In this document: piece by piece, positions 3,901 to 53,907 of the stretch
How positions within the stretch are numbered: position 1 is the stretch's first letter
Layout of the letters: each line of letters begins with the position of its first letter
DNA from: Gekko japonicus
Lineage: Eukaryota
DNA length: 64,000 nucleotides
Direction: 5' to 3'
NCBI RefSeq assembly: GCF_001447785.1
Contig: NW_015168051.1
Coordinates: 1,204,877 to 1,268,876 of the forward strand
The notes under the pieces: generated by a model
The model's database searches: none
Seen by the model: the letters and a program-made list of their open reading frames with translations, nothing else
What the model was told of the DNA's origin: nothing
Program-made: the position numbers and the translations under genes

Positions 3901-5214
3901 TGTAACGGCCATTGGCCATATGCAATAAATTGGAAATTGGAAATATTTCAACTACAATTGTGGACAGCTTTCAGAATGCAGGCACTCTGACCAGCTTTCT
4001 GTGAGAGATGCCCACAGCCCTGATACATTTTAAGATAAGCACATACAAACACACACAGAGTAACGCACAAAGTATCTTGTTTTTCAAATGCAACACTATA
4101 TTATAAAAAATGATCAAGCAGCAATTTCCTTCTTGAGCCATTAACTGTTCTGACAACAACAATGACAAAGAATTCTGTAAGCAAAGGATCATTGCTTAAT
4201 TTCTGAGACAACATGAATGGATGCTTTTCAGCAACTCTGTGCTACTGGATGTTGTATTACTGGTTCAGCTTGTGCCCAGATTACACTACTCAGCATATCC
4301 TAGTTCAATCCACTTTCTCTTGAGCATCAATCTAGATTTAAACACACAAAAGACTCCCACACACTACCTAGTTAAAATGAAATGCCAGGATATATGGCAA
4401 GTACAAGAACAATGGTTTCAAAGTAGTTTTCTTTAACTTGATTATGGATTAAGCTACTGATTCACAAACATGGCCACAAAATGAAGACCACATCAAAGAA
4501 ACGTATTCGTTCCCTGACCCTGTGCTTTTGTGCACAACTAATTCAATAAAACCCTATTTTTTCTTCAAGAATACTTTAGCATTGCACACAATACTGACCT
4601 GAGAAGAGCTCCACTTCCCTTCATCAAAGATGTCACCTAGAATAAAAACAACTTCTGGCTGCAGCAGCCGTAGGGCAGTTTGGAAGGCTCTTTCCATTTG
4701 CCATTCTCTAAGAGAAGAAAAAGAGGTACCAGTCCCAAGACTTTCGAATTAATATCACAAAGAGCTTGTCCGGGCCTGTGTTAAAAGGAAAGAGATATGC
4801 AGATATGCAAAGAACCAGCCTTCCTCCTTGATAAAGTTAGGGAATCGTTTTTGTGTGTGCCTCTCTCTCTTCAACAAGTGTCACAGGGCACAATCCAACC
4901 CCCCTCCCCACAAAAAAATCAGTTACAGTCAGTTCTTACCTCCTTAGCTTATCCAACCAATGTCCTTGGATTTCACCAAGCAAATGAGTATCTGCTAAAA
5001 ACATAGCCTTCAAAACAGACTCTGAAGTCTGTTCAGTGCCTTCTAGAGTCTGAGTTTTCAGTTGTGGCCAGTGACACTGAATTATAACTATGTAATAAAT
5101 TAAAAATTCACAGAAGACAATCACAGGAAGAGTAAAACATAACAGTTTCAGGACAAGTGAGCCTCTTTTCCTCCAAAAGAGCTTGCTCACAATACTGAAG
5201 CGCAGAAATGCCAT
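848..5214 (-). CDS. MPPE1: Metallophosphoesterase 1 (PGAP5), 5' part; coding exons 5214-4940, 4707-4599, 3326-3223, 928-848; gene continues beyond the window start
   Basis: Spliced translation MAFLRFS...FCEFLIYY...[24 protein letters not shown]|[11 protein letters not shown]...[13 protein letters not shown]|[16 protein letters not shown]...[10 protein letters not shown]|MTEFKLKRF...KGIN has the DxH, GDxxD and GNHD metallophosphoesterase motifs and matches vertebrate MPPE1. All introns are GT-AG and phase-compatible. An upstream in-frame ATG lies at 5256. Confidence 0.96.
2231..2750. mobile_element. Non-autonomous DNA transposon (PIF/Harbinger-like MITE)
   Basis: Imperfect TIRs GGCCCCAGTCACACGG ... 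CCGTGTGACCGCAGCC; near-identical copy at 34825; superfamily inferred from TIR style. Confidence 0.7.
3223..3326 (-). CDS. MPPE1: MPPE1 coding exon (104 nt)
   Basis: [35 protein letters not shown]; ctgcag acceptor, gtgagt donor. Confidence 0.95.
3873..3904. repeat. (ATTGT)n microsatellite
   Basis: Direct reading. Confidence 0.9.
4599..4707 (-). CDS. MPPE1: MPPE1 coding exon (109 nt)
   Basis: [36 protein letters not shown]; cttag acceptor, gtcagt donor. Confidence 0.95.
4940..5214 (-). CDS. MPPE1: MPPE1 first coding exon (exon acceptor at 5307)
   Basis: TM segment plus ADTHLLG motif; donor AG|gtaaga at 4940/4939; acceptor tcttgcag at 5308. Confidence 0.95.
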
Positions 5215-6073
5215 ATCAGATGACCGTTTCTCCCTGTAGATGGCACTACAATTCATCGATTCAGGCTGTTAAGTCCAATGCAAGTCTCTTCATTTCAACT
5301 GGAAACTCTGCAAGAGACACAGACAATAAAACTGTGCAGCACCTATGCTAAATATTTGTTTATATAGTGAGATACTACAATGCAGGGAGGGCAGGGTATA
5401 AGTAGAATAATAAATAAATTGAATACACAAATAAATAATAAAATTGCTTTAAAAGTCTTGTAGTGATATAAGGAAGCAAAGAGAAGGCAGAGGATTTCAT
5501 TTACCAGGAAAACTTACTTCATTAAAAAGAACAAATGTATATCCAAGATGCATTTAAAGATACAAATACAAGATATTATGTAAGAAGCAGCCTTAAATGT
5601 ATAGCATTGGTATTTTTATGCTAAATGTCTGGTCACTCAAGAACTGTCTTTGCCTTGTCAAGAGAACTGCAAAGGGGTATTAGCCCTGTCAGTCTGTTTT
5701 AGCAAATAAAACAAAAGTCCAGTGGCCCCCTAAACACTAACAACATGTATTTCAAGATGAGCTTTGATGAGTTACAGCTCACTCCCTCAGATATGCGAAG
5801 CAGCGAGCTATGACTTCTGAAAGCTCACCTTAAAAATGTTTATTTTTAGTCTTTAAAGTGCAGTGTAAAGGGCAGTGAATCTCATCACAATTAGATGGAT
5901 CAAGGCCGGCACAGTGTTGTACCAAACCCTTCTTTGGAAGGAAAGGCATGAAAATTGCGGATTAGCTCTCCACTTGACCGTAGTGCAAAAACCGATCTGT
6001 GCTCTAGGAAGTTCTCACCTTAAAGGGGTCATGAACTAAGCAGGGGGTCTGCGGCAAGCCGCCCTGTCTCAAC

Positions 6074-6255
6074 CAGTGTTCCCTCTAAGCTGAGTTAGTG
6101 TGAGCTAGCTCACAGTTTTTTAGCCTCCAGCTCACACATTTTTGTCTTGGCTCAGGAAGGGATGGCTCCAGAGCCCACTAATTTATGCAGCAGCCAAATT
6201 GTTCGCTCACAATTTTAATGCCAGTGGCTCGCAAAATAGAATTTTTGCTCACTAG
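6074..6255 (+). mobile_element. hAT-type MITE, 3' TIR missing
   Basis: 5' TIR and body match the copy at 36415. Confidence 0.8.
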
Positions 6256-7452
6256 ACCCCATCAGCAGGGGGACTGCGGCAAGTCGCCCTGTCTCAACTA
6301 CCCACCCCACCATATGGGGGGAAACCGTTACTGTGCAAGTTCCAGCGCTGTATCCCTGTCTGTCCGCAGCGAAACAAACAAAGGTCCTGTAGTACCTTAA
6401 CAGCTTTTGTGCCATCTTCAAGCCCACTTCATCAGACGCAGTTCAGAAAATCCTGTATGGTTTTTCTTCTTATACGCAGAGAGAGGGAAGGGGGTGGGGG
6501 GAGAGAATCGTGCACCTTAGATTTAAAAATTCCTGGACTTTGCACGACTGTTGTGAGCAATGTTCCCCCTAAGCCTAACATTAAATGCGACGTCCAGTGA
6601 GGAGCGAAAGGCTGCGTGTCGTGACGACACAGCGGCAAGACACCAGGAGAGAGGCGGAAGAAGAACTCCACCGGGCAGCTCCCGCGAGCACCGCCGACCC
6701 ATCTCTAGCGCTCACGGGAAGGGGTCGGAGCAACGCGCAGCCGCCGTTTCTCCCCTTGGCCAGCAGCCGCCTGCGCGGGAAAGGCGCAAAGGGGAGGGCC
6801 TGGCTTCTCGGGAGCCGAAGGGAAGCGTCGATGGCGGAAGTCGAGCCCTCCCCAGCGTCCAGCCAGCCAGCCGAAACGCCCCCGCCGGTCCGGCCAGGCC
6901 TCCTTCCAACCCCACCGTGTGACTCACCCAGAAGGAAGAGCAGGCAGCTCCCGGCGGCGGCGGCGGCGCTGGACGCCGAGTCGGCGTCAGGGGGCTGACG
7001 CTTGCCGCCAAGGCCCGCCCCGGCTGAAGCGCTGCCCGGCGGGCTGAGGGAGGGCGCGGGAAGCGGCTGGCCCAGCAGCCCAGAGGCTGCAAGAGGCGCA
7101 GGAAGCGGCAGGTGGCTCGTGGGGGGAGGCTGCCCTCCCCACCACCACCGGGTCACCCGGCGCCCTTGTGCGGGACTGGTCGGTGCGCAGGAGAGGAGGG
7201 GCTGGTTTGGGCGAGGAGCAGGGCCAGGGCGAAGACGTCGGTGTTGGCACCGGGGCGCGGCCAGGGCAAGTGGAGGCCGGTCAGCCAGGCGGGCGACGCG
7301 TGATCAGGGCGCTGCAGTGCTGGGACGGCGCCAGGCCACTTGCAGGAATCTGCCTTTTGGAAAGGCCTGGGAACAAAGTCGCCGAGGAAGGAGGTGAGGA
7401 GGAGGAGGAGGAGAGTGCTGGAAGCCCCGGCGGTGGGCTCGTCCCGGCAGGC

Positions 7453-7489
7453 GAAATGAAAGCGAAAGCCGGCCTGGGGGGCTATAAAG
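7453..7489 (+). promoter_or_regulatory. IRF/ISRE-like element (GAAATGAAAGCGAAAGC, 7453-7469) and TATA box (TATAAAG, 7483-7489)
   Basis: Tandem GAAAnnGAAA matches the IRF consensus; the TATA lies about 90 nt upstream of the ATG at 7580. Confidence 0.55.
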
Positions 7490-7579
7490 GGCCCCGCCGA
7501 GGATGCCTCCAGCCACTCAGACCCTCCGCAGACCCTTGACGTGCCCAGCAGCTCCACCACTCGCCTGTCCGCCGGCCCG

Positions 7580-7652
7580 ATGGCTCTCTGCCCGCTGCAC
7601 GCCTTGGTCCTCCTGGGCGCCGCCGCCTTCTGCATCCTCCTCTCCGCCCAAG
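7580..7652 (+). CDS. Putative exon 1 of a small secreted protein (signal peptide MALCPLHALVLLGAAAFCILLSAQ-G)
   Basis: Hydrophobic h-region and small-residue cleavage region; 73 nt ending at a phase-1 donor AAG|gtacc; TATA and ISRE-like motif upstream; downstream exons not identified (assembly gap). Confidence 0.5.
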
Positions 7653-7823
7653 GTACCAACGGGGAGGGGCGGCGGTCTCGCAAGGCCAGGCGTGGGCAGT
7701 GCCCGTCGTTGGAGCCCCGAGTGGGCTCTGCCACTGCTGCTTAAATTATACTGCTCTGGAGCCGTCTTTCCTAAGCGAAGACAAACCTGTGCAAGCTGTA
7801 GGCTAAACCCCCCCCCCCCGCTC

Positions 7824-8661
7824 NNNNNNNNNNNNNNNNNNNNNNNNNNNNNNNNNNNNNNNNNNNNNNNNNNNNNNNNNNNNNNNNNNNNNNNNNNNNN
7901 NNNNNNNNNNNNNNNNNNNNNNNNNNNNNNNNNNNNNNNNNNNNNNNNNNNNNNNNNNNNNNNNNNNNNNNNNNNNNNNNNNNNNNNNNNNNNNNNNNNN
8001 NNNNNNNNNNNNNNNNNNNNNNNNNNNNNNNNNNNNNNNNNNNNNNNNNNNNNNNNNNNNNNNNNNNNNNNNNNNNNNNNNNNNNNNNNNNNNNNNNNNN
8101 NNNNNNNNNNNNNNNNNNNNNNNNNNNNNNNNNNNNNNNNNNNNNNNNNNNNNNNNNNNNNNNNNNNNNNNNNNNNNNNNNNNNNNNNNNNNNNNNNNNN
8201 NNNNNNNNNNNNNNNNNNNNNNNNNNNNNNNNNNNNNNNNNNNNNNNNNNNNNNNNNNNNNNNNNNNNNNNNNNNNNNNNNNNNNNNNNNNNNNNNNNNN
8301 NNNNNNNNNNNNNNNNNNNNNNNNNNNNNNNNNNNNNNNNNNNNNNNNNNNNNNNNNNNNNNNNNNNNNNNNNNNNNNNNNNNNNNNNNNNNNNNNNNNN
8401 NNNNNNNNNNNNNNNNNNNNNNNNNNNNNNNNNNNNNNNNNNNNNNNNNNNNNNNNNNNNNNNNNNNNNNNNNNNNNNNNNNNNNNNNNNNNNNNNNNNN
8501 NNNNNNNNNNNNNNNNNNNNNNNNNNNNNNNNNNNNNNNNNNNNNNNNNNNNNNNNNNNNNNNNNNNNNNNNNNNNNNNNNNNNNNNNNNNNNNNNNNNN
8601 NNNNNNNNNNNNNNNNNNNNNNNNNNNNNNNNNNNNNNNNNNNNNNNNNNNNNNNNNNNNN
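7824..8661. other. Assembly gap (838 N)
   Basis: Run of N. Confidence 1.
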
Positions 8662-9159
8662 TTGTTTATTTTTTAAATAAAATAGGGGGATGCTGAATGG
8701 CGGCTTTTGCATCTTTCCACTGACTTACACATGATGAGTTTTCTCTAATTCCCAAAGTTAACTTTTTTTGGAGATGATTTTTCTTAGAATGTATTGAAGA
8801 ACAGAAGCAATTTAACCCTTATATAAGAAAGTGCACACATCTGTCTACCCAAAACATGTGCTTCCTGCGGGAGTAAGAAAGAGTCTGTGCCTGAGAGTTC
8901 GTGTGTCAGCTGTCAGCACTCAGGCAATGACAAGGGGTGCTTATCTCAGTGATTCTATCTTCCTTTAAAAAGGACCATTGCCTCACTTAACATTGCACAT
9001 CAGGCTTACGTTTCTTGCTGATCTTCTCTAGTGCTACCCACCCACACCTGGCAGTCAAAGTCTGAACCTTTAGTGACCCTCTGTTTGCTGCTATAATGGG
9101 CAAGAGCCCAAACACAGCTATCAGATGAGGCCAGGACAGTACAGCTTGCATTTCTTATT

Positions 9160-9523
9160 AGTGAAAGGGAGCAAGAGTCCAACAACACCTTAAAGAAAAG
9201 ACTAACAAAATTTGTGACAGGGCATGAGCTTTCATGAATCACTGCTCACTTATTCATATACAGCTGGAATGTGAGTCCATCTCTCCTTATATCGTGGAGA
9301 GTGAAATGATTTCAGATGCCAAATGACAATAGCGGGCATTGTTAATGAGAGAAACAACCTAGGTCTCAGTTCAGTCCAAGAGTTTGCATTGTCTTGAGCT
9401 TCTTTATCAATTGCAATTCAGTAATCTCTCTTTCTAATCTCCCTCTGAAATGCCTATCTAAGAGAATTGCCACTTTTAGGTCTGCAACTGAATGTCCTGG
9501 AAGGTTAAATTTCCCCCCACTGG
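9160..9523 (-). mobile_element. Penelope-like retroelement, 3' end (GIY-YIG C-terminus plus pLTR)
   Basis: Minus-strand translation FNLPGHSVADLKVAILLDRHFRGRLEREITELQLIKKLKTMQTLGLN is typical of the PLE GIY-YIG tail; followed by the GAAAGCTCA...TTAGTCT...AAGGTG terminal motif. Confidence 0.8.
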
Positions 9524-9665
9524 TTTTTTGTCTTAGCTCAGGAAGGATGGCTCCAGAGCAAACTAATTCATGCGGCAGCCAAATTGCTCTCTCACAACTT
9601 TAATGGCAGTAGCTCACAAAGTAGAAATTTTGCTCACAAAACTCCACAGCTTAGAGGGAACATTG
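9524..9665 (+). mobile_element. hAT-type MITE, 5'-truncated
   Basis: Body plus 3' TIR CTTAGAGGGAACATTG. Confidence 0.8.
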
Positions 9666-10594
9666 GTGGTGGGCCCCCTGAGCAAAATGTTGTTAGCTAC
9701 GGGCCTGCGTCCAGGTCGCGCACGCGAGCCACGCAAGTGACTCCCCACAACAGGAAACGCCTCTGCCAGTGGCTGACAGGTGTCCCTGGCCGGTTGCTGT
9801 GCCTCCGCTTCAGAGTTCGGGCAGCCTGTCCTGGACGCTGGCTCGGCCTCGACGAGGTGACCATCGGCTGCTCCGGGATTCTAGGCGGCTTCTGCTTCGT
9901 GCGCCTCTCACTGGCCCGGGGAAGCGGCCCTTGAGTCCACCCCCCCCCCCCCGTGGTCTTTCTCGGAGTATGGGGGGGGAGATGCTCCTCTCCCGACTGC
10001 AATGGGCAATGCATGGAGAGCTAGGGGGATGATGCAATAGGGCTGACTCCACCACTGCTGCGGGAGAGCTCCAAGTTGTTTCACGTTTGGCATCGGAAAA
10101 CGCTCAGGGTTGCAAATATTAATGGTGGTACTGCATAGCAAACCGGAAGGCTGGATGAAGTGCTGTCAGGGAGAAAACAGTCATTGACCAACAGAAGCTG
10201 GTGCTTTGGGGACGGAGTGATATTTTATTAACCTAGCACATGTACTTAGAGCCTTTCCCGTCTATTTTGTGTCTGTTACAGATTCCAAACGTACAACAGG
10301 GTGCTACTTTATATTGGGCATAATCAACCGAATTTTACTTAAACAGGTTTAAGTTCCATTGATTTACATAATGAGGCATCAGCTGGCTGTGAATTAAAAT
10401 AAAAATGTTTTAAGCAACAAAAACATTTAAGCCACATGCTTAACATTGCAACCCTATACAAGTGACTCCAGTCTTGATTTCCATTGGGTTTAAGAGTGCA
10501 ACATGTCATAAGATTGCAATCCTAGTCTTCTGTTGAAGCCAGAAGAGATGTAACAGTGCTTAACTGTGGCTGGGTCTATATGTTGCCTACCTTA

Positions 10595-10966
10595 GGCCCC
10601 GGCCACACATGCCAGAAAACGTGGGGGGGAGGTGTGGCTATTTGCACCGTCGCATTCTGATCCGCCATTATGCGATCAGACGTGACAGCGGCGCACCGGG
10701 GTTGCATCCTTTGGCGTGTGCTGCAAAGAGGACGGCCAGAGGGAATAGGTGCACACTGGCGCGATCACACCAAACAAGTCTGTCTGCAGCCTGTGGCAAA
10801 CCATTTGCTAGTAGATCTTTGCAGGTACTTTTTAACTGCGCATCTTTGGCAACACGCCACGGGTTGGCCATGGGTGCACTACGCTTCCAAGATGTTGCGG
10901 TGTGATCGCGCCCCGAAAATCCGCCCAGCATTCATGCCTTTCACGTGGCAAATTCTCCGTGTGACA
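10595..10966. mobile_element. Diverged relative of the Harbinger-like MITE
   Basis: Starts GGCCCCGGCCACAC; shares the CTACGCTTCC...GATCGCGCCCCGAAAATCCGCC block. Confidence 0.6.
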
Positions 10967-11461
10967 GTTTCACATGCAGTCTGGGGACTGCTGTTTGAGT
11001 AAAACTAGTCTCAGCCACTATGGGCTGACTGAAGTAGTATCACAGATGTTGGTCAGTATTAACATCAAGTGTTTGTCGGATAAATGGGAGGCACTTCAAA
11101 AGCTGGTTGCTGTTAAATGTAGTATCTTGATAATGTGAGGTACAAGGCACAGTTCCTTCAGATGCAAACCCTGTTTGGCCAGTCTTAGCCACTTGGGTCT
11201 GATGGAAATCTCAACTTGCTGTAAGGTCCAGCTACATTTCAATATTACGGTTCCTCTGCTGTAAAATTGAGAAAATTGAGAATACAAATGCTTATGTTGC
11301 AAGAACTTCTGTGATAGCTAACACCTAACATTTTAATGCAGCTTTCACAAAATTAAAAATGGTTGCATACCCCCTTGCAATTTCAGTGTACTTTCTAAAT
11401 CTTATTGTTATATGAGAACCTTAGAAAGTTCCCACCAGAAGTTACAGTCTTAAACCCCTTG

Positions 11462-11810
11462 TAAAGGTAAAGGTTCCCTTGCTCAAAAGCCAGTCGAGTC
11501 CGACTCTAGGGTTGCGGTGCTCATCTCCGTTTCAAAGCCGAAGAGCCAGCGCTGTCCAAAGACGTTTCCGTGGTCATGTGGCCGGCATGACTAGATGCCG
11601 AGGTGCACGGAACGCTGTTACCTTCCCACCAAAGTGGTACCTATTTATCTACTTGCAATTTCTTGCTTTCGAACTGCTAGGTTGGCAGGAGCTGGGGCCA
11701 GAGACAGGAGCTCACTCCATCATGCGGCAACTCGGGTCTCGAACTGTTGAACTACCGACCTTCCACAGCCTGCAGTTCAGCGTCTTAACCACTTGAGCCA
11801 CCACAGCTCC
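11462..11810 (-). mobile_element. Sauria SINE
   Basis: Reverse complement of the copies at 199 and 62807. Confidence 0.9.
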
Positions 11811-12203
11811 TTGACTGAAAATAAATTTCACTAGAAGTTTTACAGAGAAATCATAGAGGTTTACTTACAATTTAATCCCACCATTCTCCCACGTAAGCAT
11901 GCTAAGGACTGCAGCCTTAGTTACGAATAAAAGGATGCAGGACCAAAGTGTTAATTCAGGCTGTCAATAAAGAGTACTATATTTTTTTTAACGTTCCACT
12001 GCAGGTATTCAACTGAAACAGCCACTGACAGGAATACAAGTTACAGGATACAATTAAAAATAGAGATGATAGGGGCAGAGAAGTACTGCATAAATTATGC
12101 AAAACAATAAAAATGGATTAAATCATGATTTTATTACAAATACAGACCTTTACTCTGAATCGTACTAGATATTAAATGCTATCAGTAATCATGTATGAGT
12201 GTT

Positions 12204-12365
12204 TCATTTCTGTAAACCTCTGTGGTGATTACCACTTGGCAAAATCGATGCAAAAGTAATTCCATATGTTGAACTTAGTTGGTTCAAGCACTTCTCATAC
12301 TGATCATTCAGGTGTAATGATTCTTGAAGAGCATATTTTAAATCTTCTATTTCATCAAAAAAATC
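12204..12365 (-). CDS. Coiled-coil gene, last coding exon
   Basis: DFFDEIEDLKYALQESLHLNDQYEKCLNQLSSTYGITF...QK*; ttttcag acceptor; AATAAA (minus) at 12135-12130. Confidence 0.85.
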   Translation of the reverse strand, partial: DFFDEIEDLKYALQESLHLNDQYEKCLNQLSSTYGITFASILPSGNHHRGLQK

Positions 12366-15300
12366 CTGAAAAGAATGCCAGTACATATCTTTTAATTAAA
12401 TACTACATCCCAATAAAAACATCTAAGATTTTATAAGTTACCACTCAATGTTATTTTTATTATTGGGGGGGATCTAAAAACCAAAAGATTTGCTAAGTAA
12501 AACTGTATAAAGTTTAATTTGGCTCCCATATTACTGTACTTAACTGCTAACTAATTTAGGGTATAATCCTTATCCCATTCTTAATTATGGTAGTTCTCAT
12601 CTAGTACAATACATAGTTGAAAGCGCAGGAAAGCATCACTACCAAATCCTATTTATAGACTTTGTAAAACTGAAAAGACTTCTGTCCCTGCCAAGTGTAC
12701 CTCTGAGGGAATGAAGACTTAATTACAGGAAATACTTTGTTGCTATCTATTTCAGCTGAATATACACAAAGAAATATCGGTCAAAGGAACATTTGCTGTG
12801 TTTCCAAATTAAATCCACTGAATGTGGAACATCTTCACGTACATTCTAATGACAAAGGTATTCATAAGGGGGGGGGGGAGAGAGAGAGACACTGAGTTGG
12901 ATCCAGCCAGCTTTTTCAGTCATTCTCATCTAATTCCTGTCCTTGCTACAGGCCCTGTCCCACACGCTTTTTGTCCCGTGATCCCTAACATAGCCTTTTT
13001 GGTGGTCAAAGGGGGTCCCCCTCCTTCCTTTCCACCAGCACAAAAGCCTTAAACCTAAAAGATGAACACTTCCAGCAAAGAGTCCTTGACTGACAGTTCC
13101 ATAAAGAGGTCATCACAGGTTGCCCGTTGTGAATGCAACAGAAAGGTATATACATGGACTTGCTGTGCATGCAGAACCCTCTCCAGCAGATTGCCAGCAC
13201 GCCCAGTTCTGAGCACCTTTTGAGGAGGGGGGACATAACTAAATAATCTCACCACCACCACCAGAGAGGAACTATTTTAGTCCTCACACACCACAGATAC
13301 TTGGAAAGTACAGGTTCAAACCAAGGCTCTGGATATACAAGAGAATCTAATTATCATAGCAGAATTAGTCATATGTAGCTGACACACCTAAGTCATGGCC
13401 TTAACTTGCAAACAAGTTACCTTGTCTAATGCAGCAAGTTCATTTCTCAGCATTCTTCTCTCTCTAGATAGCTTTTCATTTTCCTTCTTCAGTTGCTGGA
13501 TCTCCAAAAGCAACTGGTCTGCAATTTAAATATATCTTCAAAATCAAGAGCTCACTAAAAAGCATAATCATGATACAACATAATTTTCACATTATATTTA
13601 AAGGCAAGATTGAAGTTGCTTTTTTCTTATAAAATTCTCTCCAGAGAAAGCCTTGCTAGTATGAAGCCCTCCTAGCTGGAAACCTGCACAGATGCTGTTT
13701 AGCCACGTACAGTTTTGTTGGCTCCTCATGACCTGATTCTGCTGAAAAAAGCACCTCATAGGATCAGCTGTGAAGACTGCTACACTGGTAGGAAATTACA
13801 GCTGTAGGAAAGGGCCATATAAAAGCCATGGAAAACCTTGAGCTGCAAATACAGATCACACGCAGCACATGGATTACAGGGTGTGACGACCTCTTATCTG
13901 GGAAGGTCTAGTTTTACTTTAAAAGTTCTTATGGTTTATTTTTCTTTGGGTATTCTGGCTGCCACCAGGAATTTTTAATAAATTCCAATTCTTCTCTTTG
14001 CTTCTGGGCTTGGTATTGTAGCACGGGGTCTAGGCCTTTCGAGGAACTATGTGGTCTGAGGAAGGATTCTTTACTTAGCTGGTAAACTTGAAGTAAATAG
14101 GATTTATTTAAAGAAAACATAAATACGAGGGTAAACAATGTAAACAGTACTGGGAAGGATTTGAACAAATGCTTGGTGTCTCTCACAAGCTTCTCCTTTA
14201 CTGACAGGGAGGTTAAAGCAACCTTGTAACACTTTTCACTGTACTCTTCTTAGACTCTCAGCTTTCAATTGTAACTCTTATAACACAGAACTTAACCGTC
14301 TGCTTAACACAGAGACTTTTACTCTTATATTTCACACAGGAACTTCTCACACAGAGACCTCAGGACAAAACTCATATCAACTGCTTTTACACAGCACACT
14401 CTGCTGACTGACTGTTTCAACACAGAACTAAACAACCCATACAGGGAAGCTTCTTCTTATAACTGTTTTTCTCAACTGTCATACCTAACAGACACACCAG
14501 ATAGACATTCCAATCATCCACACAGCATCCATTCCAAAACCCCTCCCCCTCTCTGTCACTCACCAATCATATCCCTTGCTTGTCCAGCACTCTAGATTCC
14601 TCACACAGCTATGCCAACCAAACTTTTTAAACACACACACACAGTAAAACATGGAATCGTTACACAGGGGTACAAAGTACATCAGGGAAGTGGGAAGGAG
14701 ACAGTGTTATGTGGCAAGTGGAGCTGAGATGTACAGCTCTGGTCCACTTGTGAAGCACAGAAGGTTGGCTTTAGCCGCCACAGTGCGAACCTCCATCTGC
14801 AGTAGCTAAAGGCAATTTATAGTATCAAGTTGCCAGTGGAATACAGTGCCATGTACAGTTCTCCACTTATGCCTCCTACTCAGTCACATATAAGTGTACA
14901 CATGCTAAGAAATTGAATAAAAATAAATATGAGTAGCTATTCAGACAGTACCCAGCCAATTAAACCAAACAACGTTTTCCTTCGGAAGAACAGAGGCAGT
15001 ACAGGAATCCATGTCTACCCCAGAATCTGTTCACTGAAGCCAGTCTGCTGCTGGAAAACAGCCAGGGGAGGGAGAGAAAGAGCCACTGCAAAGGTTGACG
15101 AGGGAGAGACAAAGCACAGGACAGCAGCACAAGGGGAAAGGAGCAACCAGAGGAGAAGTCTGGAAGGTCAGCACTGAGAGCCAGTGTAGGATAGTGAACA
15201 AGAGTGTGGAACTGGTATCTGGGAGACTCGGGTTTCAGTCTCCACTGGTGCCATGGAAGCCCACTGGGTCAATGATACTCTCTCAGCCTAACCTATCACA

Positions 15301-26309: not shown

Positions 26310-27892
26310 TTTTGTTGTTGTTCAGTCGCACAGTCGAGTCCGACTCTTTGCGACCCCATGGACCAGATCACGCCAGGCCTTCCTGTCTTCCGCCATCCTC
26401 TGAAGTTTGCTCAGTTTCATGTTTGTTGCATCTATGACACTGTCTAACCATCTCATCCTTTGCTGTCCCCGTCTTCTTTGACCTTCAATCTTTCCCAGCA
26501 TCAGGGTCTTCTCCAGTGAGTGCTCCCTTCTCATTTGGTGGCCAAAGTATTTGAGCTTCAGTTTCATTATCTGGCCTTCCAGGGAACAGTCAGGGTTGAT
26601 TTCTTTTAGGATTGACTGATTTGATCTTCTTGCAGTCCAAGGGACTCTCAAGAGTCTTCTCCAGCACCATAGTTCAAAAAAATCTATTCTTCGGCGCTTG
26701 GCCTTCCTTATAGTCCAACTCTCGCAGCCATATATGACTACTGGGAATACCATTGCTTTGACCATGCGGACTTTTGTTGGCAGGGTGATGTCTCTACTTT
26801 TTATCATGCTGTTTAGGTTCGCCATCGCTTTCCTCCCAAGGAGCAGGCGTCTTTTAATTTCATGGCTACTGTCACTGTCTGCGGTGATCTGGGATCCCAG
26901 GAACGTGAAGTCTGTCACTACTTCCATGACTTCCCCTTCCCTTGGCAAATGCCAAGGAGTGATGGGGCCGGATGCCATGATCTTAGTTTTTTTGATGTTG
27001 AGCTTCAAGCCCACATTTGCACTCTCCTCTTTTACCCTGAGTAAGAGGCTCTTTAGGTCCTCTTCACTTTCTGCCATTAGAGTGGTATCGTCTGCATATC
27101 TGAGGTTGTTGATCTTTTCCCCAGCAATCTTAATTCCCGCTTGTGATTCATCCAGGCCAGCATTTCGCATGATGTACTCTGCATATATATTAAATAAGCA
27201 AGGTGACAGTATACATCCTTGTCGTACTCCTTTTCCTATGCTAAACCAATCAGTTGTTCCATATCCGGTTCTAACTGTCGCTTCTTGGCCCTTATACAGG
27301 TTTCTCAAGAGACATGTGAGGTGGTCTGGTACTCCCATCTCTTTAAGGACCTGCCATAGTTTGTTGTGATCCACACAGTCAAAGGCTTTAGCATAGTCAA
27401 TGAAGCAGAAGTAGATGTTTTTCTGGCACTCTCTTGCTTTCTCCATAATCCAGCGAATGTTGGCAATTTGATCTCTAGTTCCTCTACCTCTTCGAAACCC
27501 AGCTTGTACTTCTGGTAGTTCTCTATCCACGTACTGTTGAAGCCTAGCTTGTAGGATCTTGAGCATGACCTTGCTAGCGTGTGATATGAGTGCAATTGTG
27601 CGATAGTTTGAACATTCCTTGGCATTGCCCTTCTTTGGGATTGGAATGTATACTGACCTTTTCCAATCCTGTGGCCACTGTTGCGTTATCCAAATTTGCT
27701 GGCAAATGGAGTGCAGAACTTTAACAGCATCATCTTCTAAGACTTTGAATAGCTCAACTGGAATACCATCACCTCCACTAGCTTTGTTGTTAGTAATGCT
27801 TTCTAAGGCCCATTTAACTTCACATTCCAGGATGTCTGGCTCGAGGTCAGTGATTATACCGTCGTGGTTGTCAAGGACATCGAGGTCTTTCT
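26310..27892 (-). mobile_element. Bov-B (RTE clade) LINE, 5'-truncated, with a stop-free reverse transcriptase domain
   Basis: Translation includes NYRTIALISHASKVMLKILQARL, FIDYAKAFD, GVRQGCILSP, NNLRYADD and GVAKSRTRL; 3' tail CTGAACAACAACAA; frame open from about 27890 to the stop at 26322. Confidence 0.95.
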
Positions 27893-31150: not shown

Positions 31151-34100
31151 AAGCATTGGGAGACAGCTCCGTTGTGTGTTCCTTTTGAGGCCAAGAGGGG
31201 GTCAGGAAGAAGCGGGGTTGAAATACTGTTTAGAGATGAACTCGGAGAGGAGTGGGTTGAAAGAGTGGGTGAAGAGAGTCAGCTCAAATGAAGCAGGAAA
31301 CCCAAGGGCCTTATATTTCTGGAGATCTCAAAAATAACCTGTTCAGTACTTGATTTAGAAGAACCCACAGGAAAAATGTTCTAAAACATCACAAAGGGAT
31401 TGCTGTGGAGTTGGTGCGTTTATTCTTGGAAGTGTTGATCCTGTGACATAAGGGACTCTTTTCCTTCCTTGTTGATGCAGTCATTCCTCTGTGTTCATTT
31501 AGAGATTTTGCTGCCTCTATACGTATGGATACTTATCTGGGTACTCTAAACTGTCTTTTGTCTACATTTGTATCTTTCTGTTTCTTCTTGATCTGAATGA
31601 AACAGCTTAGAAGAAAAACTATTTTAACAGTAGGGGGGAGGAGTAAAAATTATCCAAGTGATGCTTGGCTATTTTGTTTCACTGACACCTTCCTTTGTCT
31701 ACAAATAACTCCTTATCAGTTATTGTTCTTACCAAAATGTAGGAAATGTTTTATGTAACCTCACACTTGATGATAAGCCAAAGTGTATTAAGGAAGTGAG
31801 TTCATTAATTTAACAATTGCTCTGTATAAAACTGAAACCTGAGATTCAGGTTTATATTGACTCATATTTGTTATCCTTACAATACAGAGCCAAATGCTGA
31901 TGCTGTCATGAAGCAAAATGGCCGAATACCAATTTTCAGTGGAACATATTCTTACCTCTGAAGAATGCTCCCCTTTCATTATATTTGTATAGCAATACCA
32001 CTTTTGCTTTACAGAAAGAATTATTTGCATGCAGCCTGTGAAATGAAAAAGGAAAAGATCAGAAGCCTATAACTTTTTGGATGTGTAACAAAGTTTGAGT
32101 CAAGTGGCACTTTTGAGACCAAGAAAGTTTTATTCAAAGTATTTGAATAAAACTTTCTTGGTCTCAAAGGTGCCACTTGACTAAAACTTGGTTCTGTTGC
32201 TTCTGGCCAACATGGCTACCCACCTGAATCTATCTTTGGATGTGTGTTGGCTGTAGTATTAAAACATGCTACTTACTAACTTGACCTCATGAAACAATAT
32301 AATTACTTTGACATAGTATTATGACGATAAATTCAGTAAAGCCATTAGTAATTAACTGCAACAGGAAGTCACAGTCTTTATTTAGGCTGAAAAGCTACCC
32401 TGGTCCTCCATCTCTGCACAGAATGATCTGCTTTCAGTGTCGCTGTCATTTCCTGTCTACACTAGCAAGGTGTCACTTCAGAACGTTTGTGCAGGCATAG
32501 GTTAGAGGAACTAGACTAAGAACCAGACTTCTTCTTTTGTAGTATATTGTTTGTTGGGTGATTTGAATCAACTGAATGTTTTGTGTTTTTGTGGATTTTT
32601 TTGAGAGTTTGCAGGAAGCACCCTTAAAATAATGTGTTTATGGGATTTTTTCCCCTATGTAGATTATTAGAAAAGCTTTCACTGAGGAAAAACAAGTATC
32701 CACCAAAACATCTGCAGCAGATCTTGTGACAGAAACCGATCACTTTGTGGAAAACTTAATTGTTTCTGCTCTGAAAGAAAAGTTTCCCTCTCACAGGTAT
32801 GTCTACATATGGTGCTGTCTGATGCATGGCCAGTTGGAACTGGAATTCAGAGCATTATTCTGACATTGAACATTCAGGGAGTATTGGTAGAAGCAGATCT
32901 GTTTTAGACTGGGCTGGCGTCAGTATACCCTGAAGTGGAGCAGCTGCCCAGGCCCAGGTCTTCTGTGGGGCCCACTGCTGCTGCCCTGCCATCCGCTCAC
33001 CTCCTTTGCTGTCCATCACCTTGCTGTGAGCCTGACCATCACCCACACTGACATCATAGTCAGGGAAGGGTGTGCAAGCGCTGGGAGGACTGGAGAAGGA
33101 GCAGGTGAGTGGGAGGAGGATGGATGGCGAGGCAGTGGGAGGGGAGAATGCAGGCAGATGGGCAGGGCGGTGTGAGCGGGGAGCTCAGTGGCAAGCAGAG
33201 GAGGGGACGGGGCCCCTGGAGACCCTCTGCCCAAGACCCACTGAAACCTGCAACCAGCCGTGGCCAAGGATGACCTACCGTGGTCTGAGAGAATTATCCC
33301 CCTTTCTCAAACCTGAGACCTTGAAGCAAGACTCTCTATGATAACATAACCAAATTGAACCTAAGTTTGGGTCAATAGATTCACAGCAACACACCACATA
33401 GTAAAATGAGCTTTATCAGAAAGAAAATAAAGAGGGTTTTCAAAACAATATAGTTCCAGTGATGTGTTCAAGTATTCAGAAGTAACAAAAATAACTTCTA
33501 AATACCCTTACTGAACAGGATTTCTGCAGTGCAGGTCTTAACCTCTTAAAACTTCAGCAAATTCAGTCTATGAGCAAACAGCATAGTCCATAATCAGTGT
33601 AGTGTAAGATGTATACAAGTACAAGGGATGGGGAAGGGGAGTAGGATAGGGATGGAAATAAGGCCTAGCAAGATAGATTACATTTTATAGAAAACTTTGG
33701 CCACTAATCTTATGACCTACTTCAGCCAATCATCACACTATCTCCTAAGAGCTTTCTGGAAGAGCAGCAAATCCCCCCTCCCATCTTGTTCCAGTGGAAA
33801 CCAGTGACCTAATGAATAGGCCTGATGGAATGACATTGGTGGACCAGCAGTCTGTGTGCAGGGGTTACCAGCACCTGTTGTTACCTGAGCAGAACAGAGA
33901 AAAGATCTTGCAAGTGGAATTTGACTCAGACATGGCTCTTTTTCTTGACACCTGGATTTAGAAGTTAACTTTTGTAACTGGGGGCCTGCAAGACTTGTGA
34001 GGGGGGAATCCCATCCCCCCCCTTGCCAAACCCAGTGTGGCCCCCGGGCTTTTCAGCAGCCACCGCCAGGTTCAGTGTGGAGTCCTGGGTTGTATGGCAA

Positions 34101-37100
34101 CTGCTGCCAGGCCTGGTGCAGGCCCTGAGCTGTACCACTGCTGGATCAGCACAGCTATGGGATTGCTGCCACCAGGCCTGGCACAGCCCCCTTGGCTACG
34201 CTGCTGCTGCCAGGCCCATCCAAGGTGCAGCATGCCCAGGCTGCACAGCTGCTGCTGCCAGTCCCAGCACAGAGCTCTGAGCTGAACATCCACTGCTGAC
34301 TCACCTGAGGTCAGTACTCTACACTTGCACAGAGAACACTGTTTTACATTGGGAGGGGGGTTTAAATTCCCCTGTGTATTTCTTTTTTTATTTAAGAGTT
34401 CCCCAAGTTTGCTGAAGACTCTCTTTAGTCTCCTTGCAGCTCCAATCCTCAGATTTAGCTATCCACAGATGGGGCCCATGGGTGGCTATTAGAATATAAG
34501 ATGATGTGTGAGTAGGAAAAATGTCTCTTACAGGTTTACTTATCACAAGGCTAGAATGAGCATCAGCAGTCTGTCAGATATACACTTGGAGACAGAACTG
34601 CCACATAATATGAAGGATATCCCATAGTTTCAAGGTGCAATGGTACATATTGTTTTAATCCAAATGCATGGAATAATATGCAGAAACAATTTACGTCTGT
34701 AAATGCCAGTAGATGCACATGGCCAGTAGGGAGCCAGCATGCACAGCAGTTTCAGATCCCAAGTATCTTCCTGATACAAGATGTCCCTTTGGTATAGAAA
34801 CAAAGCAAATAAGTATACAACTGTGGCCCCGGTCACATGGGCAGAAAAATGCGGGGGGGGGGAGCGTGGCTGTTTGCCCCGGAGCAAAATACCGCGCGGT
34901 TGCGCGATCAGACGTCCCGTCGAGGTCCCGTGGTTAGGGGGGAGGTGCTGATCACAGGACAATCCTGTGGCGCAGCAAAGAAGCGGCCTCTCTAGCAAAA
35001 GGCTCCGCGGGTTTAACCCCTTCCAGGGCCGCAGAGGAATGCAAACTGTGTCCTCCGTCCGGTCCCCTCCAGGAGGAGCTTCAGCCGAGCCACCCTCCTG
35101 CCACCTCCCCCCTGCACCTCCCCCTCTGCTGCCCGGTGCAGAGAGTTCCTCTCAAGCAGGCCGAACCAGGAGTGGGGTGGGCGGAAAAGAGGAGGGGGTT
35201 GTGTTGTTTGTTTTTAAACGAAGTGTGCGCATGCGCCATTGGTTTCTTGTGTGCATCCCGTGGAGACTTAAAAAAAAAACCTTTAGCGACGGGACATGGG
35301 CGGGCACTGGATGCCACGACCTACCACTGGAAACGCGATCAGGCACCCGCCCTTGCCCCGCGGTTTCTGGAAACTAGTACCTCAGAGGTACTAGTTTTTT
35401 ACCCCGCATCTTCGGCGGGAAGCCTCGGGTTCGCCATGGGAGCTCTACGCTTCCCAGATGTGGCGCTGTGATCGCGCCCTGAAAATCCGCCTATCTTCCG
35501 TCTCTGTAGCATGGCTAATGCTCCGTGTGACCGCAGCCTATGAAACTCAAGTTTAGTAAAACAGCTGTGAATGATTGTGCTCAATTTTGTTGGTGGAGAG
35601 ATGAAAAAATGGGGATGCATTTTAAAAACCTGTGTAAGAAACTGTGATAATGTTGGGGAAATCAGGGGTGCAAGGACCCTTTCATGCACTCCCATTCTCA
35701 TTCATTTTGGGGAAGTAGAGAAGCTGGCTTCCCAATTGCGTCAAGGGAGAGAGAGAGTTGTTCCAAACCAAAACTCAATTTATTCCATTACACACTCTTC
35801 AGTCAAAACACACCTAATGTGCCTTTTCCATTGTTTGTTCTTCTGGCCTCATCTTCCCTTTTGCCCATTGCTGCCAAGGCAGTTTTCATTAAATCATCCT
35901 TCAGCTCTTTAGGAATGTTGGCAGCGAAGAGGTCCAAGGCCTAGAGAGAGATCAGTCTGGTGAAAAGAAGAGTCTGCTGTGGAAGGCTGAAGGATTGCAG
36001 AAGGATCCTCAAAGTTCTTGTCTAGGGCCAGGTTGATTCTCTTGTCACAAGGATCTCTGGGAAGTCAATCTGCTTCAGGTGGAATGACAGTGTTAGAAGT
36101 GAGATCAGCAACAAGAGCATCTCGCCACAAGGAACCTGAAATGGTCAGCCACTTCCAGAACCAAAAATAGAAATGGGAAGTAATCTGGTAGCTGGCCTTG
36201 GGCCTCCTTTTCCATCTTGACAACCTTGCTGAAAACCAATGGGAAATGAAGACCTAGAGAAGAAGATGGTGCATGAAGAAAGGCTGTTGCCCATTCCAGC
36301 CGTTCTATCCAGATCTGGGTCCTTGCTGCATGGAATTTCCAGGATGCAGAGAACTTTGGGAAATAATTTAGGGAAAGCCTCCTGTGGAAAAAGATGAGTT
36401 TTCAGGGTCGTCACCAGTGTTCCCTCTAAGCTGAGTTTGTGTGAGCCAGCTCACAGTTTCTTAGCCTCTGGCTCACACAGTTTTGGCTTCGCTCAAGAAG
36501 GAGGGCTCCAGAGCAAACTGGTTTTTGCAGCAGCCGAATCACCTGCTCACAACTTGAATGCCAGTAGCTCGCAAAGTAGAATTTTTGCTCACAGGACTCC
36601 AGAGCTTAGAGGGAACATTGGTCGTCACCAGGGGCTCCTGTTCTTCAGCGTTCCCCCTCTACCCTAGATGTGAAGGAATCAGATTGTTCTGGGACTTCAG
36701 AGTCTAGGTCCAGTAAGGGACTGTGTTTTCTATGTCATGCGGAGGACAGAGACCTGTACCTGCAGGAATTCCTAGGATTCGGGCTGAGGAGAGGACTGGT
36801 GCATCTGTAGGCCTGGGTATCTCTCTCCTCTCTGCCACCCGCCCCAGCAGGCCTAGGACGAAAGCAAGACCAGCTTCTGCTTCTAGATTTACTTTTATGT
36901 TTGGTTCTTCTGCATTGGATGCCTGATGGTGCTATACTAATTGAGATGCTAATGTCCTTTTGCACCTGTCCCTTAATGCAGGAAGGGAGGTTAGAGTAAG
37001 CATTCTCACCTAATACGTTAGGCAGTGGCAAGTCCCCCAGTTTTTCCTGGCTGGAGGAGTGGTAATCCTGTTCCCTAGAAGGAGAGGAGGAGTGGCTAAA

Positions 37101-53695: not shown

Positions 53696-53907
53696 NNNNN
53701 NNNNNNNNNNNNNNNNNNNNNNNNNNNNNNNNNNNNNNNNNNNNNNNNNNNNNNNNNNNNNNNNNNNNNNNNNNNNNNNNNNNNNNNNNNNNNNNNNNNN
53801 NNNNNNNNNNNNNNNNNNNNNNNNNNNNNNNNNNNNNNNNNNNNNNNNNNNNNNNNNNNNNNNNNNNNNNNNNNNNNNNNNNNNNNNNNNNNNNNNNNNN
53901 NNNNNNN
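53696..53907. other. Assembly gap (212 N) inside a GC-rich inverted-repeat element starting at about 53233
   Basis: Run of N after poly-G; 53350-53455 is approximately the reverse complement of 53560-53665. Confidence 0.95.

What the first reader, a model, noticed from the sequence alone, without database searches (positions are those of the whole stretch)
7420..8681. Candidate interferon-inducible small secreted-protein gene, head-to-head with MPPE1 and hidden by an assembly gap
Seen on the plus strand, in order: a kappaB-like GGAAGCCCC (about 7420), IRF/ISRE-like GAAATGAAAGCGAAAGC (7453-7469), TATAAAG (7483), an ATG at 7580 opening the signal-peptide-like MALCPLHALVLLGAAAFCILLSAQ, a phase-1 donor after 73 nt, an 838-N gap, and AATAAA at 8676-8681 just after the gap. 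Knowledge: a ~60-80 nt signal-peptide exon with a phase-1 intron is the layout of chemokine and defensin genes, and ISRE+kappaB+TATA promoters are typical of CCL5/CXCL10. Inference: an unannotated immune peptide gene whose mature-peptide exon(s) lie in the gap. An alternative phase-1 exon candidate at 8788-8872 (ECIEEQKQFNPYIRKCTHLSTQNMCFLR, ag/gtaaga) is also possible. The family cannot be named from what is visible.
Basis: partly seen in the sequence, partly recalled or inferred. Interest (0 to 1): 0.8.

Follow-up and report, generated by a model that had tools for sequence, protein, structure and literature searches.

The report
Orphan promoter and signal-peptide exon
Next to the gecko MPPE1 gene lies a well-formed promoter followed by a start codon and a signal-peptide-like first exon that looks like the start of an unannotated secreted-protein gene, but the rest of the gene is not visible, no transcript was seen, and its family and interferon control remain unproven.

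Summary
The set is hard to get by chance in this GC-rich island. In island shuffles TATAAA appears in 0.7%, an IRF core in 3.4%, both in 0.05%, and a leader this hydrophobic in 0.05%. The pieces are also correctly spaced: TATA, an initiator 32 nt on, a 65-nt 5'UTR, ATG, 24 hydrophobic codons, then a phase-1 GT.

The reading is weaker than the observation:
- The donor is the poorest listed candidate in the island.
- Three RNA-seq runs, read only 3-12% and thin across the locus, show 0, 0 and 0.9x over the exon and no splice from 7652.
- No protein of 52-164 aa in the 5.8-billion-protein collection carries this leader.
- The AATAAA at 8676 and the alternative exon 8788-8872 lie inside an unspliced transcribed block that reads cross without a joint.
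- The only six-cysteine ORF after the gap is at chance level.

The gene is boxed in between MPPE1 and a minus-strand CEP290-like gene ending near 12204. Any coding remainder must therefore lie in the gap, which I did not read, or be lost.

Verdict: probably a real leader exon of an unannotated gene. Interferon inducibility rests on motifs only. The family cannot be named.

The parts
7419..7428 (-). kappaB-like 10-mer, GGGGCTTCCA when read on the minus strand (one mismatch from GGGRNWYYCC). It lies about -96 to -87 from the predicted start site.
   Evidence: Sequence. The consensus is from my own knowledge. Motif only; function not tested.
7453..7469 (+). IRF/ISRE-like element with three GAAA units. 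The core GAAAGCGAAAG is at 7458-7468, about -62 to -46 from the predicted start site.
   Evidence: The core occurs in 3.4% of island shuffles. It is not enriched over the whole window (3 found, 1.7 expected).
7483..7489 (+). TATA box TATAAAG
   Evidence: TATAAA on either strand occurs in 0.7% of island shuffles.
7513..7519 (+). Initiator-like CCACTCA. The predicted start site is the A at 7515, 32 nt after the first T of the TATA box.
   Evidence: Sequence. Spacing rule and YYANWYY consensus are from my own knowledge. No 5' end data.
7515..7652 (+). Predicted first exon: a 65-nt 5'UTR plus 73 nt of coding sequence
   Evidence: Inferred from the TATA/initiator and the donor. RNA depth over 7446-7644 was 0, 0 and 0.9 in three runs.
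7580..7652 (+). ATG plus 24 codons, MALCPLHALVLLGAAAFCILLSAQ. This is a hydrophobic leader with an uncharged 14-residue core and SAQ at the end, ending in phase 1.
   Evidence: Hydrophobicity 2.85 ranks 2nd of 711 ATG-led ORFs in the window and is reached in 1/2000 island shuffles. No SignalP was available.
7653..7658 (+). Candidate splice donor gtacca. It is weak, lacking A at +4 and G at +5.
   Evidence: -0.27 bits on a rough matrix. The + strand donor at 7393 scores 6.1 and the MPPE1 exon 1 donor 4.55.
7734..7807 (-). SINE fragment in the predicted intron, followed by a C12 run that abuts the gap
   Evidence: 75-81% identity to copies at 6119-6193, 9527-9578, 36461-36533 and 46563-46636.
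7824..8661 (.). Assembly gap of 838 N, length only estimated. It was neither read nor filled.
   Evidence: One contig of run X1 overlaps 8662-8850 and runs on into the gap (table 8). Its letters were not looked at.
8676..8681 (+). AATAAA, not supported as this gene's polyadenylation signal
   Evidence: RNA depth stays at about 8-12 from 8662 to 9435 in X9.
8788..8872 (+).
   Evidence: No joint listed at either edge and the same depth on both sides.
8662..9435 (.). Unspliced transcribed block of unknown strand with no open frame. It may or may not belong to the candidate gene.
   Evidence: for depth and for stops in all six frames. TTTATT at 8665-8670 reads as AATAAA on the minus strand.
6928..7050 (-). 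MPPE1 non-coding first exon. The 3' end is fixed by the donor tgg|GTGAGT, with the last exon base at 6928. The 5' end is approximate.
   Evidence: RNA depth is about 1 over 6849-7047.
4939..5307 (-). MPPE1 first coding exon. The acceptor is ttgcag|A at 5307 and the ATG is at 5214. The 4939 end is the last codon of the open frame; the donor was not mapped.

Best explanation
This is the 5' end of an unannotated gene for a secreted or type-I membrane protein. It is transcribed divergently from MPPE1 out of the far edge of the same CpG island, but from its own TATA-plus-initiator core promoter.

Shown:
- The elements exist and are correctly ordered and spaced: kappaB-like site near -90, IRF element near -55, TATA at -32, initiator A at 7515, a 65-nt 5'UTR, the first ATG at 7580, a 24-residue hydrophobic leader, and a GT in phase 1.
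- This set is very unlikely in sequence of the island's composition.

Inferred:
- Transcription starts near 7515.
- The leader targets the product to the ER.
- The exon splices after 7652 to one or more exons carrying the mature protein.
- An IRF site and a kappaB-like site next to a TATA box make it an inducible gene (virus, interferon or inflammation). That would fit its near-silence in three unstimulated-looking RNA-seq samples.

The gene is confined between MPPE1 and the minus-strand CEP290-like gene that ends near 12204. No credible coding exon lies in 8662-12200. The mature-protein exon(s) would therefore have to be in the 838-N gap. The family cannot be named.
For: - All motifs are at the stated places.
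- In island shuffles TATAAA occurs in 14/2000, the IRF core in 68/2000 and both in 1/2000.
- A leader hydrophobicity of 2.85 or more occurs in 1/2000. Leader plus donor occurs in 1/1000.
- TATA-to-initiator spacing is 32 nt, and the upstream ATG at 7503 falls before the predicted start.
- Codon position 2 is T-rich and position 3 is 92% G+C, as expected for a coding leader in a GC-rich gene (read).
- The MPPE1 exon 1 donor at 6928 places the two start sites about 0.45-0.5 kb apart, a usual bidirectional layout.
- About 2 reads lie in 7446-7644 in X11 and barely extend past 7645.
Against: - There is no RNA over the exon in X9 and X10 and no joint from 7652. Only 3-12% of each run was read, though, and MPPE1 exon 1 reached about 1x.
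- The donor is weak (-0.27 bits). A much stronger + strand donor lies at 7393, upstream of the TATA box.
- No protein of 52-164 aa shares the leader.
- The leader has no positive n-region and has Q at -1.
- Hydrophobic ATG-led ORFs occur about 8 times per window at a similar score.
- No mature-protein exon is visible.
- Gaps next to a SINE and a homopolymer are usually repeats, not exons.
- Conservation could not be tested.
Confidence: 0.45

Rival explanations
1. Divergent non-coding transcription from the MPPE1 CpG island. The plus strand makes a promoter-upstream or long non-coding RNA, the TATA/IRF elements act as promoter or enhancer pieces for it or for MPPE1 itself, and the leader-like ORF is incidental.
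For: - The strongest + strand donor of the island is at 7393 (GAG|GTGAGG, 6.1 bits), upstream of the TATA box.
- X9 has reads in 7247-7445 (depth about 1.9) but none in 7446-7644.
- The block 8662-9435 is transcribed, unspliced and closed in all six frames.
- The TATA box reads TTTATA on the minus strand, so it could also serve a minus-strand start near 7455.
- The leader has no protein relatives.
Against: - A 24-codon leader this hydrophobic, starting at the first ATG after a TATA/initiator pair, is rare in island-like sequence (1/2000).
- A TATA box is unusual for CpG-island divergent transcripts (my own knowledge).
- Depth of the 8662-9435 block does not track depth in 7247-7445 or 7446-7644 across runs.
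Confidence: 0.2
2. Relic first exon. The promoter and leader are what remains of a gene once present between MPPE1 and the CEP290-like gene, whose downstream exons have decayed or been removed by SINE insertions.
For: - No credible coding exon lies in 8662-12200.
- A SINE sits 82 nt after the donor and repeats fill much of 9525-11811.
- The donor is weak.
- No expression was seen.
Against: - The TATA box, initiator, ATG and open leader are all intact.
- AT-rich motifs in a CpG island would be expected to erode.
- The gap hides 838 or more bases, where a compact two- or three-exon remainder could fit.
Confidence: 0.15
3. Pure coincidence. Unrelated motif matches and a GC-rich ORF rich in Leu and Ala happen to line up, and nothing is transcribed from here.
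For: - The ISRE core is not enriched window-wide (3 found, 1.7 expected).
- Eight ATG-led ORFs in the window have similar hydrophobicity.
- The finding was picked from a very large scan.
- No RNA support.
Against: - The joint rarity in island shuffles is high: TATA and IRF core together in 1/2000, the leader in 1/2000.
- The order and spacing of all elements on one strand are correct.
Confidence: 0.15

Closest known systems
Inducible chemokine genes (CCL5 and CXCL10 type)
   Same: A short first exon ends in phase 1 just after the signal peptide. The compact TATA promoter carries an IRF/ISRE element and a kappaB-like site (layout from my own knowledge; elements seen).
   Different: No CC or CXC mature exon is visible. 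The locus is not a chemokine cluster; it is a single slot between MPPE1 and a coiled-coil gene. The donor is weak and no induction data exist.
MHC class I and beta-2-microglobulin genes
   Same: These have a signal-peptide first exon ending in phase 1 and promoters with kappaB (enhancer A) and ISRE elements (my own knowledge).
   Different: There is no room for an SXY module between the ISRE and the TATA box (13 nt). No alpha-domain or Ig-like exon was recognised in 8662-12200 (no long open frame; the three frames tested gave no Pfam match). A class I heavy chain cannot fit in the space left. A beta-2-microglobulin-sized exon in the gap cannot be excluded.
Beta-defensin genes
   Same: A two-part layout of signal-peptide exon, phase-1 intron and a roughly 40-residue six-cysteine exon. 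A phase-1 ORF with six cysteines does exist at 8828-8950.
   Different: Its spacing, C-x4-C-x2-C-x11-C-x2-C-x8-C, lacks the terminal CC and does not fit the defensin pattern. Such an ORF arises in 67/500 shuffles. Reads cross its would-be acceptor at even depth.
Class II cytokine genes (interferons including IFN-upsilon, IL-10 family)
   Same: Virus-inducible promoters with IRF and NF-kappaB sites near a TATA box, and a signal peptide in exon 1.
   Different: Intron-containing members have all introns in phase 0, and IFN-upsilon lies between ADARB2 and PFKP (PMC8863823). Here the phase is 1 and the locus is MPPE1-IMPA2.
Bidirectional CpG-island promoter pairs
   Same: Two divergent start sites about 0.5 kb apart lie inside one CpG island (GC 68%, CpG observed/expected 0.77).
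   Different: The plus-strand side has its own TATA box and initiator, which is atypical for CpG-island partners.

Membership tests
Chemokine (CC/CXC) gene | Signal-peptide first exon followed by a phase-1 intron | tested here: met
   73 coding nt and then GT. The donor is weak and its use is not shown.
Chemokine (CC/CXC) gene | Mature domain with the four-cysteine CC or CXC pattern | not testable with these tools
   It would lie in the gap 7824-8661, which was not to be read. No such frame was seen by eye among the phase-1 acceptor-led ORFs or the six-frame translation of 8662-9540.
Chemokine (CC/CXC) gene | Sequence relatives among known chemokines | tested here: inconclusive
   The word search with the leader frame found nothing, but a 24-residue leader carries too little signal.
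Beta-defensin gene | Six-cysteine motif C-x(4-8)-C-x(3-5)-C-x(9-13)-C-x(4-7)-CC in the exon after the leader | tested here: not met
   The only six-cysteine phase-1 ORF (8828-8950) has a different spacing and no CC. It is at chance level, 67/500. The motif is from my own knowledge.
Class II cytokines (IFN and IL-10 families) | All introns in phase 0; first exon runs on into helix A | tested here: not met
   The phase is 1, directly after the leader. The rule is from PMC8863823.
Class II cytokines (IFN-upsilon) | Conserved locus between ADARB2 and PFKP | tested here: not met
   The locus is MPPE1 / CEP290-like / IMPA2. The paper was read.
MHC class I heavy chain | Alpha1, alpha2 and alpha3 exons of about 270 nt each, plus transmembrane exons, downstream of the leader | tested here: not met
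   None of the open frames of 55 aa or more in 8662-12200 looks like such an exon, and the three frames tested gave no Pfam match. The space before the next gene is too small.
Interferon-stimulated gene | ISRE or IRF element in the proximal promoter | tested here: met
   GAAAGCGAAAG at 7458-7468, about 50 nt before the predicted start. It is rare in island shuffles (3.4%).
Interferon-stimulated gene | Transcript induced by interferon or virus | not testable with these tools
   No stimulated samples were available. The three RNA runs show 0 to 0.9x.
Secretory protein (classical signal peptide) | n-region, hydrophobic core of 7-15 residues, and small residues at -3 and -1 | tested here: inconclusive
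   The core ALVLLGAAAFCILL is good (2.85). There is no basic n-region. S at -3 is acceptable, but Q at -1 is uncommon. No SignalP was available.
Expressed gene | RNA reads over the exon and a splice joint from its donor | tested here: inconclusive
   Depth was 0, 0 and 0.9 and no joint was seen. Only 3-12% of each run was read, and the neighbouring MPPE1 exon 1 reached about 1x.

The most novel reading that the evidence does not exclude
A gecko- or squamate-specific gene for a small secreted peptide of a family not yet described. It would be switched on by IRF and NF-kappaB from its own TATA promoter inside the MPPE1 CpG island, with its mature-peptide exon(s) hidden in the assembly gap.
Probability: 0.15. 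Interest if true: 0.55.

Novelty: new member of a known kind. Interest (0 to 1): 0.3.

Why it matters
If real, it would add an unannotated, probably inducible secreted-protein gene to a reptile genome. Reptile immune effectors are poorly catalogued. It would also show how assembly gaps beside SINEs and homopolymers can hide small genes. It would be an unusual bidirectional pair: a housekeeping CpG-island gene back to back with a TATA-driven inducible gene. As it stands it is a lead for a cheap bench test, not a discovery.

Tried and rejected
- Word search with the leader frame (7460-7741, scored on residues 41-94, candidates of 52-164 aa): no hit.
- Word search with the overlapping minus-strand ORF 7156-7734, hoping to reach orthologous contigs: no hit.
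- Pfam on the leader frame, the minus ORF and three open frames after the gap: nothing.
- Rfam on the whole window: nothing.
- Route to other species' loci. I left the third word search unused because it could no longer lead to DNA.
- Literature. No paper links MPPE1 with synteny, and the ten papers naming MPPE1, IMPA2 and GNAL together concern mammals. The IFN-upsilon lead was rejected on intron phase and locus.
- Earlier notes of this scan: nothing on this place by sequence or words.
- Six-cysteine phase-1 ORF at 8828-8950: chance level.
- Alternative exon 8788-8872 and AATAAA 8676: not supported by reads.
- The contigs of run X1 look like low-coverage DNA, with about 4-5x on RNA-silent stretches too, so they are not evidence of expression.
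The pieces were examined apart.
- The gap was not filled and its letters were not looked up.
Full report
**Setting**

On the minus strand, the exon translated over 4939-5256 aligns at 61% identity to residues 1-94 of a 400-residue protein. That protein is Pelodiscus sinensis metallophosphoesterase 1 and carries the Pfam Metallophos domain.

The MPPE1 structure at this end is as follows:
- The coding exon starts after ttgcag at 5307, with the ATG at 5214.
- A non-coding first exon ends at 6928 with the donor tgg|GTGAGT.
- The MPPE1 start therefore lies around 7000-7100, inside a CpG island. Over 6500-7823 the island has GC 68% and CpG observed/expected 0.77.

IMPA2 exons lie on the plus strand at about 32.7, 38.0 and 42.7 kb. 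A plus-strand gene starting at 7515 therefore has only about 4.7 kb before it meets the tail of the next gene.

- The kappaB-like site is better read on the minus strand: GGGGCTTCCA at 7428-7419, one mismatch from the consensus as I recall it.
- The IRF element contains a perfect GAAANNGAAA core at 7458-7468.
- TATAAAG is at 7483-7489.
- I add an initiator-like CCACTCA whose A is at 7515, 32 nt after the first T of the TATA box.

With that start site, the upstream ATG at 7503 is outside the transcript. The 5'UTR is 65 nt and the first ATG is 7580. It opens MALCPLHALVLLGAAAFCILLSAQ, followed by G|gtacca (73 nt, phase 1).

**Is it more than chance?**

I tested this with dinucleotide-preserving shuffles of the island:

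| Feature | Shuffles showing it |
|---|---|
| TATAAA, either strand | 14 of 2000 |
| GAAANNGAAA | 68 of 2000 |
| Both motifs | 1 of 2000 |
| ATG-led ORF of 24+ codons with a 12-residue hydrophobic window as high as observed (2.85) | 1 of 2000 |
| Leader plus a usable donor (criteria tuned after seeing the data) | 1 of 1000 |

Two cautions apply:
- Over the whole AT-richer window the ISRE core is not enriched (3 found, 1.7 expected).
- Hydrophobic ATG-led ORFs are not rare in real sequence. This one ranks second of 711, and eight score 2.75 or more.

Even so, such a leader falling within about 100 nt downstream of a TATA/initiator pair on the same strand, next to an IRF core, is improbable. That remains true after allowing for the size of the scan.

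**The gap**

Nothing can be read across it.
- The unspliced frame from 7580 ends at TAA 7742.
- The long 'ORF' 7503-8696 is another frame, kept open only by N read as X.
- The left flank of the gap is a SINE fragment (7734-7807) and then twelve Cs. This is a typical cause of an assembly break.
- The right flank is AT-rich.
- One contig of run X1 overlaps 8662-8850 and continues into the gap.

**RNA evidence**

No run on record as RNA held the stretch. I laid three raw RNA-seq runs of the same species label (X9-X11) and one contig set (X1) on 6650-12600. Only 3-12% of each raw run was read, and the libraries behave as unstranded.

| Region | Depth |
|---|---|
| Predicted exon (7446-7644) | 0 (X9), 0 (X10), 0.9 (X11) |
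| MPPE1 exon 1 zone (6849-7047) | about 1 |
| 8662-9435 | about 8-12 in X9, 0-5 in X11 |
| 9834-10629 | near 0 |

- No joint from 7652 was listed.
- Because MPPE1 exon 1 itself reached only about 1x, the locus is thinly sampled. The negative result is weak.
- X1 covers RNA-silent stretches at about 4-5x and looks like DNA, so it says nothing on expression.
- The even depth across 8662-9435 has no joints at 8787/8788, 8827/8828 or 8872/8873.
- All six frames of that block are closed.
- On the minus strand the block ends with AATAAA (TTTATT at 8665-8670), so it may be a minus-strand RNA. The block stays unexplained.

**Weak points of the gene model**

It is the lowest of the candidates listed.
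- The island's best plus-strand donor is at 7393 (GAG|GTGAGG, 6.1 bits). It lies upstream of the TATA box, in a bin where X9 has about 1.9x.
- A CpG-island-type divergent transcript with a non-coding first exon ending at 7393 is therefore a live alternative or addition.
- The leader lacks a basic n-region and would be cut after Q.
- After the gap, a scan for pyrimidine-rich acceptors entered in phase 1 gave one cysteine-rich ORF: 41 residues with six Cys, spaced C-x4-C-x2-C-x11-C-x2-C-x8-C. An ORF of that kind arises in 67 of 500 shuffles, and the spacing does not match defensins.

**Searches for relatives**

- The leader frame found nothing among proteins of 52-164 residues. Proteins outside that range were not seen by this search.
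- The overlapping minus ORF found nothing.
- Pfam gave nothing, and Rfam gave nothing.
- The decisive conservation test could therefore not be run. The remaining word search was left unused because it could no longer lead to DNA.

**Comparison with known kinds**

- The layout works like an inducible chemokine gene or an MHC-I/B2M-type gene: leader exon, phase-1 intron, and an IRF plus kappaB promoter. That comparison rests on my own knowledge of those genes.
- Membership in any family cannot be shown, because the mature part is unseen.
- Class II cytokines, including IFN-upsilon, are excluded. Their introns are in phase 0 and IFN-upsilon sits between ADARB2 and PFKP (PMC8863823).
- An MHC class I heavy chain is excluded for lack of exons and of room.
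- A defensin reading of the visible six-cysteine ORF fails on spacing and on chance level.

**Verdict**

- The best reading is the real 5' end of an unannotated, probably inducible gene for a secreted or membrane protein (0.45).
- The rivals are a non-coding divergent transcript with an incidental ORF (0.20), a relic first exon (0.15) and coincidence (0.15).
- Interferon inducibility is a motif-level inference only.
- Interest is modest until a cDNA or a conserved orthologue is shown.

Noticed in passing
window 8662-9435: An unspliced block transcribed at about 8-12x in X9 and 0-5x in X11, closed in all six frames and unique within the window. AATAAA on the minus strand (TTTATT at 8665-8670) lies right at the gap edge. 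Strand and identity are unknown.
   Followed up: partly
window 7247-7445, donor at 7393: The strongest plus-strand splice donor of the CpG island (GAG|GTGAGG) lies upstream of the TATA box, in a bin with RNA reads in X9. It may mark a non-coding divergent first exon. A CAG acceptor at 7529-7531 would allow it to join upstream of the ATG at 7580.
   Followed up: partly
window 8828-8950: A phase-1, acceptor-led ORF of 41 residues with six cysteines and a stop codon. It looks like a peptide exon, but such an ORF arises in 13% of shuffles, and reads cross its acceptor.
   Followed up: yes
window 6650-12600 (RNA reads): In the non-repeat stretches (8662-9435 and 10966-11226), the RNA-seq animals differ from the reference at about 1-1.5% of positions, mostly as fixed differences. 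This suggests a different population or lineage under the same species label.
   Followed up: no
window 56554, minus strand: The most hydrophobic ATG-led ORF in the window, MPGSRDCLVLPLLAAVVLGFIRFFFPSSHL. It may be a leader or transmembrane start of another gene beyond IMPA2.
   Followed up: no
window 32726-42734, plus strand: IMPA2 exons recognised by motifs (LVTETDHFVE, WIIDPVDGT, GLHCWDLAAA).
   Followed up: partly
window 26322-27566, minus strand: A 414-residue open reading frame that looks like a LINE reverse transcriptase fragment.
   Followed up: no
window 53696-53907: A second assembly gap of 212 N.
   Followed up: no
window 10587-10965: A GC-rich repeat with copies at 2223-2743 and 35392-35531. 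It accounts for part of the read depth over 10630-11027.
   Followed up: partly
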